Virus record (IMG/VR): IMGVR_UViG_3300041411_000129
Location: 124,001 to 188,000 of that record
Direction: 5' to 3' (one strand)
DNA: 64,000 nucleotides
The translations under genes were made by a program, and so were the position numbers. Shown one piece after another: positions 1 to 15,265 of the stretch (its first letter is position 1; each line of letters opens with the position of its first letter). The notes beneath the pieces are model-generated. The model saw only the letters and a program-made list of their open reading frames with translations, made no database searches and was not told the origin of the DNA.

Positions 1-1
1 T

Positions 2-262
2 CCGGGCATCCGCGTTACCACCACCGCTCCGCTGCTGGGCTTCGAGCCCGACTTCCTCGAGGCGCTGTCGCGCTCCCTGGACGCAGCTGACATGTCGAGC
101 TACATGACTGCCGAAGGTGGTCTGAACACTCGTCGTCACGTTGGTGGTAGCAACTGGTCGCAGCTGGCAACTTCCGACATCGGCATCAGCCGTCGTCGTG
201 GTTCCGACCGCACCACCGCTGATCGTGGCCGTGGTGGTCTGTTCGACACCATCGACTACTAA
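2..262 (+). CDS. chmA: Chimallin (major nuclear shell protein), C-terminal fragment, truncated by the window edge
   Basis: Frame 2 is open from the edge to TAA 260-262 and reads PGIRVTTTAPLLGFEPDFLEALSRSLDAADM...RGRGGLFDTIDY. The F-x-P-x-F-x-x-A-L helix resembles the chimallin C-terminal region. It lies directly upstream of the nvRNAP beta'-N gene, as gp54-gp55 do in phiKZ. Confidence 0.75.
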   Translation, partial: PGIRVTTTAPLLGFEPDFLEALSRSLDAADMSSYMTAEGGLNTRRHVGGSNWSQLATSDIGISRRRGSDRTTADRGRGGLFDTIDY

Positions 263-6217: not shown

Positions 6218-7075
6218 ATGACCGTTGAGAATATTTCACGAGAGAAGCTGTCCGAAAGAGCCATGGGTCAGTTTCCAATCTCCATTGCTACAAGTCTGGC
6301 AATCGAGTCTCTGGTCGGTATCCTTCCTGAGGCTCCTACGGACTCGCCTGAGATCTTCAAGCGGGACCTGCTACTGATCAACATCCGCACGTTGATTCGT
6401 AACCTGTTGGGCTCTGTAGATAAGGAGGCACGCGCTTTACTCGAAGAGTACACGATGGCTGAAGCCGTCAGTAACGAGATGCGCGTTATTGAGGAGATCA
6501 TCTCAGAGACGTCAGATGGTCGATGTGAAGTAAAGTTCTATCACTGCACGTATGGCGATGTTCCTCGCAAGTACAAGCAAGCTCTGTTGAAAGCTCCGAC
6601 CACAACAGCGCAACACATGTACTGGGCTCAGAAGAATCTGGTGATCAAGAATCTCCTGACTCAATTTGAGAGCGGTTCTCCTATCGAACAGTACACAACC
6701 GACTTCCCTGACTTCAATTACAAGACAGTGCTTCTGACGCATTATCCGATCGACCTGCTACAAAGGTATCGGTTTACCTCGTTAGCGCTCTTAGAATCGC
6801 ACACAGGGGCTATAAAGACACCTCTTATGTGGAACACGAAGTTACTTGGCGGAAAGGAGAATCCGAACCTGCCTTTTGACAAGATGACCTTGCAGATGTT
6901 TGGTGATGGGATTCTATTCAGCCCGATGCCTATCAAGATCCGCAAGCGTGTTCTGGAGCTAGCCGAGACTTACAAATGGACTCCGGCTACCACTAAGGCT
7001 TTGATCATAGATTCCGCTGCGGCTCGTAAAGACCCGGCACTGGAGATGTTGATCAAGGATCTCTATAGTGCGTAA
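6218..7075 (+). CDS. Conserved phiKZ-like protein (between SbcD and the ChmC-like gene)
   Basis: 285 aa; GQFPISIATSLAIE and INIRTLIRN blocks; conserved position. Confidence 0.8.
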   Translation: MTVENISREKLSERAMGQFPISIATSLAIESLVGILPEAPTDSPEIFKRDLLLINIRTLIRNLLGSVDKEARALLEEYTMAEAVSNEMRVIEEIISETSDGRCEVKFYHCTYGDVPRKYKQALLKAPTTTAQHMYWAQKNLVIKNLLTQFESGSPIEQYTTDFPDFNYKTVLLTHYPIDLLQRYRFTSLALLESHTGAIKTPLMWNTKLLGGKENPNLPFDKMTLQMFGDGILFSPMPIKIRKRVLELAETYKWTPATTKALIIDSAAARKDPALEMLIKDLYSA

Positions 7076-7139
7076 ATAGTTATGAATAGGGACAATGGAA
7101 TGTCCAGAAACCACATTCATCCTCACTCAGGTGATTTAC

Positions 7140-7940
7140 ATGTCGCAACAACCCGAAAAGAAACGCCGCGAACCGGAAGCCATCGACGACGGTAAACTCC
7201 GTCTGTACGGCGCTCCTCAGAAGGAAGGCGCCCGTCAGACAATGATCCGGGTGAAGCTGGATTCGAACAACAACAACCCGATCATCGAGGTCGACTTCGG
7301 TTACAAGACCGAACCGAAAGCTGGCAAGTCTGAAGGCTTCCCGGTCAAGATCGATACGCCGATGGCGCCGATCCCTTTCCGTACCCTGATGAACCTGATC
7401 ATCCGTGTTGCGAACTACAACGGCGAAGTGTCGTTCGAAGTCGACAACTGGGGCTTCCCATTCATGTGGGATGCGGATCAGCGTAAGAGCGTTCGTGCCA
7501 AAGAGAAGATGATCATCTCTCGCTTCCAAGTGGCCAAACGTGAAGACGGTGTTGTAACCTTCGGCATCACTGCCAAAGGCAAGCCAGACATGGTTCACGA
7601 GTTCAAATCTGACGAATACCACATGATCATGCAAAATGGTCAGCCGGTTGACGTGAAGATCTCTAGCCGTGAAGCAGCGATTGCAACTGCTGAAGCCTGG
7701 CTGGAAGTGTACTACGAGCGCTTCACCAACAAGTGGGAAGAGCCTGAGTACCAGAAGAAGCGTCGTCTGGAAAACATGCAGAAAGCCCAAAATGGCGGCG
7801 GTGGTTACCAGCAACGTAACAACAATGGCGGCGGTGGCGGTGGTAACAACTACCAGCAGCGTCCTCCTCAGCAACAGCAACAGCAGCCATCAGCGCCTCT
7901 GGGCGACGGTAACGGCTTCGACGACGATATCCCTTTCTAG
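7140..7940 (+). CDS. chmC: ChmC-like nucleic-acid-binding protein with a G/N/Q-rich tail ending DDDIPF
   Basis: Directly upstream of the sigma-like subunit and PicA, the position of ChmC; folded N-domain plus disordered tail. The name rests on synteny. Confidence 0.6.
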   Translation: MSQQPEKKRREPEAIDDGKLRLYGAPQKEGARQTMIRVKLDSNNNNPIIEVDFGYKTEPKAGKSEGFPVKIDTPMAPIPFRTLMNLIIRVANYNGEVSFEVDNWGFPFMWDADQRKSVRAKEKMIISRFQVAKREDGVVTFGITAKGKPDMVHEFKSDEYHMIMQNGQPVDVKISSREAAIATAEAWLEVYYERFTNKWEEPEYQKKRRLENMQKAQNGGGGYQQRNNNGGGGGGNNYQQRPPQQQQQQPSAPLGDGNGFDDDIPF

Positions 7941-7962
7941 GGTCTGAGAGCATTTAGCGTTT

Positions 7963-8003
7963 GTGATACAGGGTCTAACAGCCTTGTATCACGGGCTTTA
8001 TGC
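7963..8003 (+). terminator. Hairpin followed by TTTATGC
   Basis: GTGATACAGGG...CCTTGTATCAC, then GGGCTTTATGC. Confidence 0.6.
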
Positions 8004-8037: not shown

Positions 8038-8080
8038 ACTATAGAGCAAGCACCATATAGTGACCAAGCGGAGTGTATTG

Positions 8081-9670
8081 ATGGAATTCAGCATCACTGG
8101 ATTTACCAAACGAAGTTTCTCAGCTGTCGCTGTGTCCCACCCTGGTGAAAACGATATCATCATTAATGCTGCGGGTTACGCTAACGCTAAACCGGGTGCA
8201 GTAAAGAACGATGACGAGTTCGGGATGCGCGTCGAGCTGTTCAGCGAGATCAATGATCTCATCAGCCGTTACAGTAAGGGGGATCAACAAAAGCTGTACG
8301 ATTGCTACGCCCGCCTTGACACGGTGCTGGACTCGTACGGTACAGATGTAAAAGCCAGTGAATTCATGGAGTTGCTGCAAGATATCGTTAAAGGTATCTT
8401 CGACATCGTGAAGTTCGAAGATCTGCGTGATTACCTGACCAGTAATAAGAACATCAAGTTCCCCGCAGAACTGGCCGACACTTACGTTACAGCAGATAAG
8501 ATCACTCCGATCTACATGGAGCGTACTTATCTGAAACGGGAATACATCGATCTGGCAGCAGTGGCATTGGGCCTGCGGTGCATGATTCCTGTTTGGGGCG
8601 CCTTCCTTCCAATCGCTATAAAGGAAGAAGGTCCGAAGAAGAAGGAGTACGTTGCGTACAAACTTCTGGAAACCTGCCTGCTCAAAGAGTGTCCTGCATT
8701 CGATCGTCTGGAAACTTACGTTCGGGCAAACACTACCGAGATGGAACACGAGATGGCTATCATCTTCGAGTTCCTGTCATCCGAGGAGATCCCTGTCTTC
8801 CTGATGGCACTGGCATTGATCCGTAAGGTTTCGATCGCCCCGTTGTCCGCAGAGACGGATAAGGATCACTTGATGAAGGTGGTCTTCAACTACGTCTGCG
8901 GTAACAACAACAGACTTCCGGCGGCATTCGGCGGTAACATCCGGTCGAAGATCGATGTGGAAGCAGCAACAGACGACAACAGTTCGGTCTGGTGCTATTA
9001 CAAAATGAAGGAGCAGATCAGTACTGGCGACCTCTGCATCTTCCAGCTGTACATCACCGATTACCTCGAGGCAGCTCGGGCAATCGATCAAGAGATCACT
9101 GACGAACAAACCGAGATGTGCGTAGCCCGCGCGCAGAAGTTGGCACGGTTTGATCCGAACGATGCACAAGTAGCTCTCTGCATCTGGGTTATGTCTACAG
9201 TGGTAGCAGGTTGTGCGATCGAGATGTTCGACCGTAACACTCTGTTCACGGCAATGGGTATTTCCCAGACCGTCCTGTGGAAGTGGGGTTTCCATCAATT
9301 GGCAATCCTACAAACAGCAGCTCCCGTCCAGATGGCAGACGACGAGATGATGACCCCGGTTCCTAGAACCAAGATCAGCGACGAGAACATGAAACAGCTG
9401 GAATACATCTATCCTTACACAATGCCGGAGAGCAAGAAGGATAGTGGTCAATCACCAAACGTTGGGGTACGTGGGGTGGAAGACGCGGCAAATGTATTCT
9501 TTAAGAACGAGTGGGAACCTCAGTGCCCGCGCCAATTGGCAGCGAAGTACGAGCGGACAGACGTTACCCGGCGTCTGCAAGTTTCCAGTGACTTCCGTGA
9601 TGAGCTGGCTGAGTTGTTTATCAAGCTGGACGGTTACGTACGTCACATCCCTATCCCGGTAATGGACTGA
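8081..9670 (+). CDS. Non-virion RNAP sigma-like specificity subunit (phiKZ gp68-like)
   Basis: About 530 aa; position immediately before PicA matches the gp68-gp69-gp70 order; no motif-level proof. Confidence 0.75.
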   Translation: MEFSITGFTKRSFSAVAVSHPGENDIIINAAGYANAKPGAVKNDDEFGMRVELFSEINDLISRYSKGDQQKLYDCYARLDTVLDSYGTDVKASEFMELLQDIVKGIFDIVKFEDLRDYLTSNKNIKFPAELADTYVTADKITPIYMERTYLKREYIDLAAVALGLRCMIPVWGAFLPIAIKEEGPKKKEYVAYKLLETCLLKECPAFDRLETYVRANTTEMEHEMAIIFEFLSSEEIPVFLMALALIRKVSIAPLSAETDKDHLMKVVFNYVCGNNNRLPAAFGGNIRSKIDVEAATDDNSSVWCYYKMKEQISTGDLCIFQLYITDYLEAARAIDQEITDEQTEMCVARAQKLARFDPNDAQVALCIWVMSTVVAGCAIEMFDRNTLFTAMGISQTVLWKWGFHQLAILQTAAPVQMADDEMMTPVPRTKISDENMKQLEYIYPYTMPESKKDSGQSPNVGVRGVEDAANVFFKNEWEPQCPRQLAAKYERTDVTRRLQVSSDFRDELAELFIKLDGYVRHIPIPVMD

Positions 9671-13084: not shown

Positions 13085-15265
13085 ATGAATCCATTTGATC
13101 CAACCGATCATTTACCTCAAGAGCGCTACACCATTCCACCGGAGATGGTTCCGATCAGTGGTTTAAACTCTCAGTTCAAATGTGTCTCTGGTGCCCGTCA
13201 AGCAATGTTCACCGGTAACCTGTCCCAAGTATTGATCGTGGATGGACGTACCCGTAAACGCCAGCAGACTGGGTTGGAACGCGAGATTGCCAAAGCTACA
13301 TTTAACCATCAGTTCCCTCGTGAAGCTGTGGTATTGGCGATCATCCCACGATTTACATCCCGTAACTTCGGCGATAAATTCCAGATCAACCCGTTCGATC
13401 TGGTGATCTACGAGGATTGGGAAACGAAAGAGCTGGACGTGGTCGAGTTGAGCAAGTTTCACGTAATGCACCAGCATTACGGATTCGAGTTCGAATACGA
13501 TCAGGACGTCTACGACGCCATCGTTAAAGGTAAACGTTTCAAAGCAGGTACAGTCATTGCTCGTTCTCCGGCAGTTACGGATGACGGCGACTACATGTAC
13601 GGCCTGGAAACCAACGTCTGCATGATCTCTGATCCGGCAGGTACTGAAGACGGTGTAAAGATCAGTCAGAGTTATGCCAAGCGTATTCGCTCGACAGGCT
13701 TTGAAAGTCGGATTGCTCGCTTCGGCGGTAGCCATTACCCAATTAACTGGAACGGTAACCTGGAGGAGTACAAACCTATTCCAGACATCGGTGATTTCAT
13801 CCAGTCAAACGGTCTGATCTGCGCCTCACGGCCTTTCGATCCAAAGTACGATCCAGTCTACATGACTCGGACCAAGCTACTTAAACCGCAGTATGGGTTG
13901 GACACACCGCTGTACGGCGTACCTAACGCTCAAGTCGTAGACATCCGAGTCCTTCATAACGATAGGCTGTCTTCCCCGAAACTACCAAAGGAAATGACCA
14001 AACAGTTCCTGAAGTACTACGAGGCCGACCAAGAGTTCTACACCAAGATCGTTAAGACGTGCCTCTGCCGGAAAGGTAACTTCCTGGCTGACGACGTTGC
14101 AATGTCTCCACGTCTGCGCATTCTCCTGTACGAAGCAATCGCACGTAGCGGTGAGCGTCTGCTGGAAGAAGGCATCTGGCCGAAGAGCAAAGCCGACCAA
14201 CTGCGTGTTCGCACGAAGTATCGCGGCGAGATCTTAGATGAGTTCCGTGTGGAAATCATCTACCAGTACAAGACGTCGGTTGGTGAAGGTCCTAAGGTTA
14301 CTGACCAATCTGGTGGTAAAGGTGTTACTTCGGCGGTTGCTCCAGACGAAGACATGCCTACAGACGAGAACGGTATTCGTGCCGACGTGGTGATCTTCTC
14401 GAACTCCACGGTAAACCGTCTGAACAACGGTCGTCAACATACCCAGGTAATCGGTGCTGCTGGCCGGGATATCATCAAACGTGTTCGTAAGTCTTACGGC
14501 TTGCCAGCCTTCGGTCCGATTGATCGGGAAGAAGTCAAACGTGCGGTGACGTCTCAGAACAACATGGCTGTAACCATGAAGAACTTTGCGTACATCATCG
14601 GCTTCTATAAGCTAGTGGCGCCTGCAATGTACGAACGTCTGACGCGTAACGATGTCATTCCGCAAGGGATTCACTTGCAGCATGTAATCGAATGCATCAT
14701 GGACGGCGAAGATCCTCACGGTCTGTTCCTGCAACTCGCATCCTCTGACGAAGTCTACATGGACAAAGTCATCAAGGAGATCGAATCAGGTCCGTACATG
14801 CCAGATCTGACGCCAGTGACCTATCGGAACCTGGCTGGCGATATGGTAACCACCAAGACCAGCATCCTGATCGGTCCTGACTACTACCTGCCTTTGGAGA
14901 AGACGGCTACCGACGGTTCCGGTGTATCGTCCTCCAAGACAAACCACTTCGGTGTTACTGCCCGTCTGACGAATGCTGACAAGTATGCCAGCCCTGGCCG
15001 TGAAACCGTAACCAAATCTACCGGTGAGTCCGAAGCGCGTAACCACGCTCACGCATATGGTGCTGAGCCCCTTGCTCACATCATGGACTTGAACTACAAC
15101 CCGGTGGTCCACAAAGAAGCCTGCATGACGATCCTCACCCACGAGACACCGACCAACATCGAATGTCTTGTTGACCGTGAGAAGTTTAAGCTTGGTGGAC
15201 ATCGTCCGCTGGCTTACGTTCGCCACATGATGGCCGTATCTGGTAAGAATATCTCCAGGGAGTAA
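13085..15265 (+). CDS. Non-virion RNA polymerase beta C-terminal subunit (phiKZ gp71-73-like), uninterrupted
   Basis: GARQAMF, EDGVKIS, GPKVTDQSGGKGV (GDK...GNKG equivalent) and GESEAR motifs. Confidence 0.92.
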   Translation: MNPFDPTDHLPQERYTIPPEMVPISGLNSQFKCVSGARQAMFTGNLSQVLIVDGRTRKRQQTGLEREIAKATFNHQFPREAVVLAIIPRFTSRNFGDKFQINPFDLVIYEDWETKELDVVELSKFHVMHQHYGFEFEYDQDVYDAIVKGKRFKAGTVIARSPAVTDDGDYMYGLETNVCMISDPAGTEDGVKISQSYAKRIRSTGFESRIARFGGSHYPINWNGNLEEYKPIPDIGDFIQSNGLICASRPFDPKYDPVYMTRTKLLKPQYGLDTPLYGVPNAQVVDIRVLHNDRLSSPKLPKEMTKQFLKYYEADQEFYTKIVKTCLCRKGNFLADDVAMSPRLRILLYEAIARSGERLLEEGIWPKSKADQLRVRTKYRGEILDEFRVEIIYQYKTSVGEGPKVTDQSGGKGVTSAVAPDEDMPTDENGIRADVVIFSNSTVNRLNNGRQHTQVIGAAGRDIIKRVRKSYGLPAFGPIDREEVKRAVTSQNNMAVTMKNFAYIIGFYKLVAPAMYERLTRNDVIPQGIHLQHVIECIMDGEDPHGLFLQLASSDEVYMDKVIKEIESGPYMPDLTPVTYRNLAGDMVTTKTSILIGPDYYLPLEKTATDGSGVSSSKTNHFGVTARLTNADKYASPGRETVTKSTGESEARNHAHAYGAEPLAHIMDLNYNPVVHKEACMTILTHETPTNIECLVDREKFKLGGHRPLAYVRHMMAVSGKNISRE

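What the first reader, a model, noticed from the sequence alone, without database searches (positions are those of the whole stretch)
7790..7940. ChmC-like protein ends in a perfect bacterial SSB tail (G/N/Q linker + FDDDIPF)
Seen: the C-terminus is NGGGGYQQRNNNGGGGGGNNYQQRPPQQQQQQPSAPLGDGNGFDDDIPF. Known: bacterial SSB ends in a G/Q/P-rich linker plus DFDDDIPF, which recruits partners such as ExoI, RecQ, PriA, RecG, Pol III chi and Ung. ChmC is described as an RNA/ssDNA-binding, condensate-forming nucleus protein with a non-OB fold. Inference: a non-OB nucleic-acid binder with an SSB-Ct mimic could be the functional SSB of the phage nucleus, could recruit or co-import host repair enzymes, or could titrate host SSB partners.
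Basis: partly seen in the sequence, partly recalled or inferred. Interest (0 to 1): 0.65.

Follow-up and report, generated by a model that had tools for sequence, protein, structure and literature searches.

The report
Phage ChmC with bacterial SSB tail
A nucleus-forming jumbo phage from plant-root soil encodes its known RNA/ssDNA-binding protein ChmC with a C-terminal end identical to the partner-docking tail of bacterial SSB; the tail is conserved across the ChmC family, and these phages carry no ordinary SSB gene, so ChmC may be their SSB-like recruiting hub.

Summary
The ORF at 7140-7940 (+) ends in a G/Q/N/P-rich stretch followed by FDDDIPF and a stop.

- **Identity:** it is the ChmC orthologue (phiKZ gp67, PhiPA3 gp61, Goslar gp176) of a complete 254-kb chimallivirus from rhizosphere metagenomes. 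It matches the same PHROG, gives hhalign probability 96.7%, and shares the gene order of phiKZ gp65 to gp75.
- **Fold:** the predicted N-domain is Whirly/PUR-like, not OB.
- **Tail conservation:** the tail is a family trait. Of 167 diverse ChmC relatives, 127 end in Pro plus a hydrophobic residue. The consensus F-D-D-D-I-P-F equals the E. coli SSB tip. Tail positions -4 and -2 rank among the best-conserved columns of the protein, while the linker varies even between strains.
- **No other SSB:** no SSB, gp32 or gp2.5-type gene was found in this genome. No PF00436 SSB was found in five cultured chimalliviruses.
- **Model phages:** their tips are degenerate (PSF, PNF, LAF). That may explain why the ChmC paper calls the region an S/D/E-rich cluster and never mentions SSB.

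The most likely reading is a docking peptide on a tetrameric single-strand-binding hub, analogous to SSB. Its partners are unknown; Rhc, UvsX and nvRNAP are candidates from published pulldown and proximity-labelling data. Mimicry aimed at the host remains possible but is less favoured. Nothing about the tail's function has been tested.

The parts
7140..7940 (+). ChmC orthologue, 266 aa plus stop. The upstream in-frame ATG at 7095 is less likely to be the start.
   Evidence: ORF. Hits phrog_3284 at E 1.2e-28 over its full length, the family that holds phiKZ gp67, PhiPA3 gp61 and Goslar gp176. hhalign against phiKZ gp67 gives probability 96.7%, E 4e-10. 19 homologues were aligned.
7129..7134 (+). 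Shine-Dalgarno-like AGGTGA, 5 nt before the ATG at 7140
   Evidence: Sequence read. Homologues begin at the equivalent Met.
7140..7793 (+). Folded core, residues 1-218: two beta-beta-beta-beta-alpha Whirly/PUR-like repeats followed by two helices
   Evidence: AF2 model gives pLDDT 80-97 over residues 11-210. VIA-align top hits are MRP1 2gia Z 9.1, StWhy2 3n1h Z 8.8, PBF-2 1l3a Z 7.8 and Pur-alpha 3k44 Z 7.3; the next, unrelated hits are at 5.4 or below. Foldseek top hits are all Whirly, MRP or PURA. BFVD matches are jumbo-phage ChmC orthologues.
7794..7916 (+). Disordered G/Q/N/P-rich linker, residues 219-259
   Evidence: pLDDT 35-47. Family linker composition is G 24%, N 15%, Q 10%. Sequence and length vary even between strains about 98-99% identical.
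7917..7937 (+). C-terminal tip FDDDIPF, residues 260-266, identical to the last seven residues of E. coli SSB
   Evidence: The PDB profile search aligns it to ...MDFDDDIPF of 1eqq and 7f2n. Counts among 167 relatives: -1 F 99, -2 P 129, -3 I/L/V/F 146, -4 D 130, -5 D 114, -6 D 100, -7 F 58. Positions -4 and -2 rank within the top 15 of 191 folded-domain columns.
7961..7994 (+). Stable hairpin (14-bp stem, 6-nt loop) 21 nt after the stop codon. It may be a terminator or an mRNA-stabilising element.
   Evidence: Fold energy -29.3 kcal/mol, z -3.9, 0 of 200 shuffles fold as well. The simple terminator scan did not call it because it lacks a T-run.
6218..7075 (+). phiKZ gp66-like gene, the upstream syntenic neighbour (context)
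   Evidence: phrog_3229. BLASTP against KTN4_088 gives E 5e-37.
8060..9670 (+). phiKZ gp68-like nvRNAP subunit, the downstream syntenic neighbour (context). Its true start is probably the ATG at 8081.
   Evidence: phrog_3209. BLASTP against KTN4_090 gives E 5e-44, with the alignment starting at query residue 8. The PhiPA3 homologue gp62 co-purifies with ChmC (PMC11077065).

Best explanation
The gene encodes the ChmC protein of an uncultured nucleus-forming jumbo phage (a chimallivirus).

**Anatomy.** ChmC combines three parts:
- a Whirly-fold core that binds single-stranded nucleic acid; the PhiPA3 orthologue is a tetramer (published);
- a disordered G/N/Q-rich linker;
- a short acidic and hydrophobic tip, F-D-D-D-I-P-F-COOH.

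This is the same three-part layout as bacterial SSB (OB tetramer, disordered linker, C-terminal peptide), built on a different fold.

**Proposed mechanism.**
1. The tip is a selected short linear docking motif of the SSB C-terminal type.
2. When ChmC coats single strands in the phage nucleus (nascent mRNA, displaced DNA in R-loops, fork or recombination ssDNA), the tips recruit and concentrate enzymes that have a matching pocket.
3. The likeliest partners are phage-encoded and nuclear. [quoted passage not shown]
4. When no nucleic acid is bound, the acidic tip probably folds back on the basic binding face and, together with the linker, promotes condensates, as in E. coli SSB.
5. ChmC would then be the SSB-equivalent hub of phages that have no canonical SSB.

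**Shown here:** the sequence, family membership, predicted fold, conservation of the tip, and absence of the three SSB families searched.
**Taken from papers:** tetramer, RNA and ssDNA binding, condensates, abundance, co-purifying proteins.
**Inferred:** that the tip docks partners, which partners, and any role on ssDNA.
For: - **Sequence and identity of the tip to E. coli SSB:**
- **ChmC membership:**; synteny.
- **Chimallin and split polymerase next door:**
- **Whirly fold, no OB fold:**
- **Tip under purifying selection while the linker drifts:**
  - all 18 close homologues keep it;
  - 127 of 167 relatives end in P plus a hydrophobic residue, and 100 of 167 match [DE][DE][ILVMF]P[FWYMLI]$;
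  - -4 D and -2 P rank within the top 15 of 191 core columns;
  - strain variants change linker codons, and no listed change falls in 7917-7937.
- **A conserved hydrophobic-Pro-aromatic end is what a pocket-binding peptide needs, not what a mere acidic cluster needs** (inference).
- **No SSB, gp32 or gp2.5-type gene in the complete genome**, and no PF00436 in five cultured chimalliviruses.
- **Literature:**
  - ChmC is a tetramer with Kd 58 nM for ssRNA and 184 nM for ssDNA. It is the second most abundant non-structural protein, is made early, and was found by proximity to UvsX. Removing its C-terminal region abolishes condensates (PMC11077065).
  - A GFP-Rhc pulldown recovers ChmC, nvRNAP and DNAP subunits (PMC13648698).
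  - E. coli RNase HI is recruited by the SSB C-terminus (PMC11253446).
  - E. coli SSB phase-separates through its linker and C-terminal peptide, and the peptide competes with ssDNA for the OB fold (PMC7584906).
Against: - No binding experiment or confident complex model exists for any partner.
- Published functional data on ChmC point to mRNA (eCLIP, nuclear retention of mRNA on knockdown), not to replication.
- ChmC binds RNA about three times more tightly than ssDNA.
- The tip is degenerate in some lineages (Goslar LAF, Psa21 MAF, Vibrio Yong XC32 TGW, Eowyn VWG), so a strict SSB-type pocket cannot be universal.
- Only three SSB families were searched, so a divergent SSB could be present unnoticed.
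- Whether the linker and tip were captured from an ssb gene or arose by convergence cannot be decided from low-complexity sequence.
Confidence: 0.45

Rival explanations
1. **Host-directed mimicry.** The tip copies the host SSB C-terminal peptide so that ChmC binds host proteins of the SSB interactome (ExoI, RecQ, PriA, RecG, Ung, Pol III chi, RNase HI and others). ChmC is very abundant and partly cytoplasmic. The outcome could be to titrate those proteins away from host DNA or from phage-targeting pathways, or to bring useful ones to the phage.
For: - The seven terminal residues are identical to E. coli SSB.
- The bacterial peptide is highly conserved and binds at least 18 partners (PMC7584906).
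- GFP-ChmC is seen in the cytoplasm as well as at the shell (PMC11077065).
- The exact consensus is the commonest state in the family: 38 of 167 match D[DE]D[ILV]PF$.
Against: - Host SSB tips are near-invariant, yet ChmC tips drift in well-studied phages of E. coli and P. aeruginosa (LAF, PSF, PNF). An inserted residue between Pro and the terminal Phe should spoil a canonical pocket fit (inference).
- Published ChmC pulldowns list ribosomal proteins and host RNAP, not SSB partners.
- The nucleus is described as excluding host factors.
- The host of this phage is unknown.
Confidence: 0.15
2. **Self-regulation only.** The acidic tip has no external partner. It acts as an 'electronegative cluster' that folds back on the basic Whirly face, suppresses non-specific RNA binding and tunes condensate formation. 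This is what the ChmC authors suggested.
For: - PMC11077065 describes the region as an S/D/E-rich cluster and shows that deleting residues 204-251 abolishes condensates while RNA binding and tetramers persist.
- In E. coli SSB the peptide also binds its own OB fold and promotes phase separation.
- Positions -4 to -6 are acidic in 70-85% of relatives.
Against: - Charge alone does not explain the conservation of Pro at -2 (77%), an aliphatic residue at -3 (89%) and a hydrophobic or aromatic last residue (93%) at a fixed distance from the free carboxylate.
- In SSB the self-interaction and partner docking coexist, so this reading does not exclude the main one.
Confidence: 0.2
3. **RNA-centred docking.** The tip anchors ChmC to the transcription and export machinery, such as the nvRNAP subunit encoded by the next gene (gp68-like), or ChmB or PicA at the shell. 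Nascent mRNA would be handed to ChmC and exported, with no role on ssDNA. The likeness to SSB would then be convergent chemistry.
For: - ChmC pulldowns contain ChmB, the nvRNAP subunit gp62 (the phiKZ gp68 homologue) and a vRNAP subunit. Knockdown traps mRNA in the nucleus (PMC11077065).
- The gene order ChmC, gp68-like, PicA-like is conserved.
- From my own knowledge, not checked here: the C-terminus of phage N4 SSB activates RNA polymerase.
Against: - No direct evidence shows that the tip, rather than bound RNA, mediates those associations.
- It does not explain proximity to UvsX, co-purification with DNAP subunits, or the lack of any other SSB.
Confidence: 0.15

Closest known systems
ChmC (Chimallin C): PhiPA3 gp61, phiKZ gp67, Goslar gp176, 201phi2-1 gp123
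   Same: - Same PHROG (phrog_3284), same gene position, same predicted Whirly-like core.
- Same N/G-rich disordered C-terminal region ending in an acidic patch.
   Different: - About 17% identity to phiKZ gp67 in the aligned core.
- The tip here is the exact bacterial consensus FDDDIPF, whereas the studied proteins end FDEDMPSF, FDDEIPNF and AFDGLAF.
- The linker here is richer in Q and P.
Bacterial SSB (E. coli SSB: OB tetramer, disordered linker, C-terminal peptide MDFDDDIPF)
   Same: - Same linker composition class and the same last seven residues.
- A published relative is a homotetramer.
- Both bind single strands and form condensates that depend on the C-terminal region.
   Different: - The core is a Whirly/PUR-like fold, not an OB fold. 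There is no PF00436 match.
- It prefers RNA over ssDNA in vitro.
- Partner binding by the tip is untested.
Whirly/PUR/MRP proteins (plant WHY1/2/3 and PBF-2, potato StWhy2, T. brucei MRP1/MRP2, Pur-alpha)
   Same: These are the best structural matches to the predicted core (Z 7.3-9.1). They are tetrameric binders of single-stranded DNA or RNA.
   Different: - No detectable sequence similarity (Pfam gives no Whirly hit).
- As far as I know, none carries an SSB-type linker and tip.
Phage SSBs with acidic C-terminal tails (T7 gp2.5, T4 gp32)
   Same: From general knowledge: a phage-encoded single-strand binder whose acidic C-terminal tail both competes with DNA for the binding face and recruits the phage's own polymerase, helicase and recombination proteins.
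   Different: - Those are OB-fold proteins with their own tail sequences.
- No gp32 or gp2.5/Enc34-type domain is present in this genome.

Membership tests
ChmC (chimallivirus nucleus-associated RNA-binding protein) | Sequence or profile homology to PhiPA3 gp61, phiKZ gp67 and Goslar gp176 | tested here: met
   phrog_3284 at E 1.2e-28 over the full length. The same PHROG is hit by phiKZ gp67, PhiPA3 gp61, Goslar gp176 and DT01. hhalign against phiKZ gp67 gives probability 96.7%, E 4e-10.
ChmC (chimallivirus nucleus-associated RNA-binding protein) | Position in the conserved block SbcD, gp66, ChmC, gp68 (nvRNAP), gp69 (PicA) ... nvRNAP beta subunits, helicase, in a genome that encodes chimallin | tested here: met
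   Gene order matches KTN4 (phiKZ) and DT01. Flanking genes are homologous. ChmA lies just upstream (phrog_4795 and PF25677).
ChmC (chimallivirus nucleus-associated RNA-binding protein) | Whirly-like core followed by a C-terminal disordered N/G-rich region of about 50-70 residues | tested here: met
   AF2 model with Whirly, MRP and PUR top hits. Residues 220-266 have pLDDT below 50 and are G/Q/N-rich.
ChmC (chimallivirus nucleus-associated RNA-binding protein) | Homotetramer, ssRNA binding, RNA-dependent condensates, nuclear-shell localisation | not testable with these tools
   Known only for PhiPA3 and Goslar ChmC (PMC11077065). Three of the six basic residues mutated in PhiPA3 align to K or R here: R32, R37 and K70.
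Bacterial SSB family (PF00436) | OB-fold ssDNA-binding domain | tested here: not met
   No Pfam SSB hit for the protein or anywhere in the genome. The predicted fold is Whirly-like, and no OB protein appears among the top structural matches.
Bacterial SSB family (PF00436) | Disordered G/Q/P-rich linker followed by a conserved acidic C-terminal peptide ending in IPF-COOH | tested here: met
   FDDDIPF is followed directly by the stop codon. The family profile aligns this region to the tails of 1eqq and 7f2n.
Bacterial SSB family (PF00436) | The C-terminal peptide binds partner proteins (ExoI, RecQ, PriA, chi, RNase HI and others) | not testable with these tools
   No binding data exist. The one complex prediction tried gave no verdict (see Tried and rejected).
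Whirly/PUR superfamily | Tandem beta-beta-beta-beta-alpha repeats forming the Whirly/PUR fold | tested here: met
   Secondary-structure order. Z scores 9.1, 8.8, 7.8 and 7.3 to MRP1, StWhy2, PBF-2 and Pur-alpha stand above unrelated hits at 5.4 or below. This is a predicted model, not a solved structure.
Whirly/PUR superfamily | Sequence membership in Pfam Whirly or PurA families | tested here: not met
   No such Pfam hit at E up to 1.

The most novel reading that the evidence does not exclude
ChmC is the missing replicative and repair SSB of nucleus-forming jumbo phages. It would be a Whirly-fold tetramer that carries the bacterial SSB linker-plus-tip module, acquired either by convergence or by capture of the 3' end of an ssb gene. 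[quoted passage not shown] In clades with the exact FDDDIPF tip it could additionally engage the host SSB interactome. The mRNA-export phenotype would then be only one face of a general single-strand hub.
Probability: 0.3. Interest if true: 0.8.

Novelty: new variant of a known kind. Interest (0 to 1): 0.62.

Why it matters
Chimalliviruses replicate DNA inside a protein shell described as excluding host factors. Papers read here note that they lack a recognisable clamp and primase. No canonical SSB was found in this genome or in five cultured relatives.

If ChmC's tip is a true SSB-type docking peptide, three things follow:
- It names a candidate for the missing SSB.
- It gives a handle (a 7-9 residue peptide) for finding the nuclear replication, recombination and R-loop partners.
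- It recasts ChmC from an mRNA-export factor into a general single-strand hub.

It would also show that the SSB 'tetramer, disordered linker, tip' design can be rebuilt on a non-OB fold. In the literature held here, no paper links ChmC to SSB. The tests are simple in existing model phages.

Tried and rejected
1. **Complex prediction of Rhc with the tail.** Full-length Rhc (51-row alignment) was folded with ChmC residues 227-266. The tool returned 'no answer', with no support and no evidence against. It is not used either way.
2. **Searches of the phage collection.** tblastn of ChmC and blastn of 7 kb around it found nothing. The phage is too distant and the tail is masked as low complexity. 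Relatives were reached through the RNAP subunit and phiKZ gp67.
3. **Pfam on ChmC.** Only sub-threshold noise appeared (Phage_gp49, TPP_enzyme_M_2).
4. **Shared promoter motif.** CTATAGTG, seen upstream of ChmC, is not over-represented (2 found, 1.1 expected). The idea was dropped.
5. **Simple terminator scan.** It did not call the hairpin after the stop codon. Folding shows the hairpin is stable.
6. **Conservation of RNA-binding residues.** Mapping the six PhiPA3 residues gave only three conserved as K or R. The alignment in that region is uncertain, so this is weak evidence.
7. **Origin of the linker and tip.** Capture from an ssb gene versus convergence was considered but judged undecidable from low-complexity sequence, so it was not pursued.
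8. **Chance origin of the tail.** Rejected on conservation.
9. **SSB-peptide site on the Rhc RNase H domain.** The binding site on E. coli RNase HI could not be confirmed from the papers held, so the mapping was not done.

Full report
**1. Observation**

FDDDIPF is encoded at 7917-7937.

The start is most likely the ATG at 7140 (266 aa). An AGGTGA lies 5 nt upstream, and every homologue begins at the equivalent Met-Ser. The ATG at 7095, used in an automatic gene call (281 aa), is less likely.

In the complete genome this is the only one of 1909 stop-to-stop frames of at least 50 aa that ends in an acidic-aliphatic-Pro-aromatic motif.

**2. What genome this is**

- The window is bases 124,001-188,000 of a 253,921-bp IMG/VR virus record with direct terminal repeats, rated 100% complete.
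- Just upstream of the window lie a divergent family-B DNA polymerase subunit and a chimallin (phrog_4795 'nuclear shell protein', PF25677).
- The window holds several split RNA polymerase beta-type subunits.
- The nearest cultured phage shares only 40% identity in an RNAP subunit (Pseudomonas phage pPa_SNUABM_DT01).
- Near-identical DNA occurs in rhizosphere, root and soil metagenomes from about 20 studies. The host is unknown.

So this is an uncultured, widespread, nucleus-forming jumbo phage.

**3. The protein is ChmC**

- It matches phrog_3284 over its full length (E 1.2e-28). phiKZ gp67, PhiPA3 gp61 and Goslar gp176, the three proteins studied as ChmC, hit the same PHROG.
- A profile of 19 homologues aligns to phiKZ gp67 with hhalign probability 96.7%.
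- Gene order is the same as in phiKZ-type phage KTN4 and in DT01: SbcD-like nuclease, gp66-like, this gene, gp68-like nvRNAP subunit, gp69-like (PicA in phiKZ), another gene, nvRNAP beta subunits, UvsW-like helicase.
- The flanking genes are homologous at E 5e-37, 5e-44 and 6e-24.

**4. Fold**

AlphaFold2 on the 19-row alignment gave a mean pLDDT of 78.6, with 80-97 over residues 11-210. The model has two beta-beta-beta-beta-alpha units plus two helices, and a disordered tail from about residue 220.

| Search | Best matches | Next unrelated |
|---|---|---|
| VIA-align, 48,161 PDB representatives | T. brucei MRP1 Z 9.1; potato StWhy2 Z 8.8; PBF-2 Z 7.8; Pur-alpha Z 7.3 | Z 5.4 or below |
| Foldseek, PDB | Whirly, MRP and PURA entries only at the top; probabilities up to 0.99, E-values weak | - |
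| Foldseek, BFVD | jumbo-phage orthologues such as Klebsiella phage Eowyn ORF067 | - |

No OB-fold protein appears among the top matches.

**5. The tail is a family trait under selection**

- All 18 close homologues (38-92% identity) end F-D-x-D-[IL]-P-F or a one-residue variant.
- An exhaustive profile search found 625 relatives at E up to 0.001. I examined the 167 sequences in hand. Residue counts from the C-terminus:

| Position | Commonest residues (of 167) |
|---|---|
| -1 | F 99, M 21, W 15, L 11 |
| -2 | P 129 |
| -3 | I 79, L 38, V 15, F 14 |
| -4 | D 130 |
| -5 | D 114 |
| -6 | D 100 |
| -7 | F 58 |

- The consensus is thus FDDDIPF. 127 of 167 end in Pro plus a hydrophobic residue, and 100 of 167 match [DE][DE][ILVMF]P[FWYMLI]$.
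- D at -4 and P at -2 rank within the 15 best-conserved of 191 folded-domain columns.
- The linker between core and tip is only compositionally conserved (G 24%, N 15%, Q 10%).
- Strains about 98% identical to the window differ at many linker positions (7790-7868) but at only two listed positions in the core. None of the listed differences falls in 7917-7937; eight further differences were not listed by the tool.
- A profile of the family searched against all PDB sequences returns only the C-terminal tails of bacterial SSBs at the top (7f2n at E 0.007; E. coli 1eqq at E 0.2).

**6. Why this was not noticed before**

The ChmC paper (PMC11077065) describes the C-terminal 50-70 residues as an N/G-rich part followed by an S/D/E-rich 'electronegative cluster', and never mentions SSB.

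The three proteins it shows have degenerate tips: phiKZ ...AFDEDMPSF, PhiPA3 ...GFDDEIPNF, Goslar ...VAFDGLAF.

Other cultured phages range from exact to lost:
- Erwinia pEa_SNUABM_48: FDSDIPF
- Salmonella SA002: FDESIPF
- Xanthomonas RTH11: DDDIPM
- Ralstonia RP31: SDDIPW
- DT01: FDDDVPL
- Vibrio Yong XC32: ...SSTGW

Four literature searches found no paper that links ChmC, or chimalliviruses, to an SSB-type tail.

**7. Is there another SSB?**

- No match to PF00436 (SSB), PF08804 (gp32) or PF10991 (Enc34/gp2.5-type) in this complete genome at E up to 1.
- No PF00436 in KTN4 (phiKZ), DT01, PhiPA3, Goslar or pEa_SNUABM_48.
- These are only three families, so a divergent SSB is not excluded.

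**8. How it most likely works**

Published facts:
- PhiPA3 ChmC is a homotetramer that binds ssRNA (58 nM) and ssDNA (184 nM, with higher cooperativity).
- It is the second most abundant non-structural protein, is made early, and was first found by proximity labelling from UvsX.
- It loses condensate formation when residues 204-251 are removed.
- Goslar GFP-Rhc pulls down ChmC together with nvRNAP and DNA polymerase subunits.
- ChmC knockdown is deleterious in phiKZ.
- E. coli SSB is likewise a tetramer with a disordered linker and a conserved tip that binds at least 18 partners. Its linker and tip drive phase separation, and the tip competes with ssDNA for the OB fold. The tip recruits RNase HI to forks for R-loop removal.

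Putting these together, I infer that ChmC is an SSB analogue built on a Whirly core. Its tip would be a docking peptide for proteins that act on ChmC-coated single strands, and would also self-regulate binding and condensation.

Partner candidates, in my order of preference:
2. UvsX;
3. the gp68-like nvRNAP subunit;
4. SbcCD and the helicases.

None of these is shown.

**9. Rivals**

- **Host mimicry** (titrating or hijacking the host SSB interactome) remains possible for clades with an exact tip. It is weakened by the drift of the tip in phages of E. coli and P. aeruginosa, whose own SSB tips are constant.
- **Pure charge-cluster role** does not explain the conserved Pro and hydrophobic residues at fixed distance from the carboxylate.
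- **RNA-only docking role** (nvRNAP or shell pore) fits the published export phenotype, but not the UvsX and DNAP associations or the missing SSB.

**10. Verdict**

The gene is a new member of a known family. The family-wide SSB-type linker-plus-tip on a non-OB core is, as far as the held literature shows, unreported, and amounts to a new variant of the SSB design.

Everything about the tip's function is inference. The decisive experiments are simple and are listed under next steps.

Noticed in passing
window 7961-7994: A 14-bp stem-loop begins 21 nt after the ChmC stop codon (-29.3 kcal/mol, z -3.9). It has no T-run, so the simple terminator scan missed it. It may end or stabilise the transcript of this highly expressed gene.
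   Followed up: partly
window 7268-7418 and 7625-7775: A soil metatranscriptome run holds two 151-nt contigs (95-99% alike) that both lie inside the ChmC ORF. It holds none in the neighbouring genes of the 1.9-kb stretch laid. This is compatible with high ChmC expression, but DNA carry-over cannot be excluded.
   Followed up: partly
window 7095-7139 and 8060-8080: Probable start-codon over-extensions. For ChmC, homologues and an AGGTGA site favour the ATG at 7140 over 7095. For the gp68-like gene, the alignment to phiKZ-type gp68 starts at residue 8, which favours the ATG at 8081 over the GTG at 8060.
   Followed up: partly
window 13085-15265: The nvRNAP beta'-like subunit is one uninterrupted 726-aa ORF here and in DT01. 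In phiKZ-type phages the same protein matches in two pieces, and in some records an HNH homing endonuclease lies between them.
   Followed up: no
window 6218-7075 versus 7140-7793: Between strains about 98% identical (runs X6 and X7), the gp66-like gene carries about 26 of the listed differences. The folded part of ChmC carries only 2, so the ChmC core is unusually constrained.
   Followed up: no
window 7080-7880, minus strand: A 266-aa open frame lies antisense to ChmC. It has no homologues or other support and is taken as a shadow of the coding frame.
   Followed up: no
G000 C1 58,057-59,544 (L003:1261-2748): This is the phage's Rhc orthologue (RNase H-clamp): 495 aa, with a PF00075 match over residues 81-186. 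73 metagenomic homologues were found.
   Followed up: partly
window 1-262 and G000 C1 122,214-124,262: The chimallin (ChmA) gene ends inside the first 262 bases of the window (phrog_4795, PF25677). ChmA and ChmC therefore lie about 7 kb apart, as in PhiPA3.
   Followed up: yes
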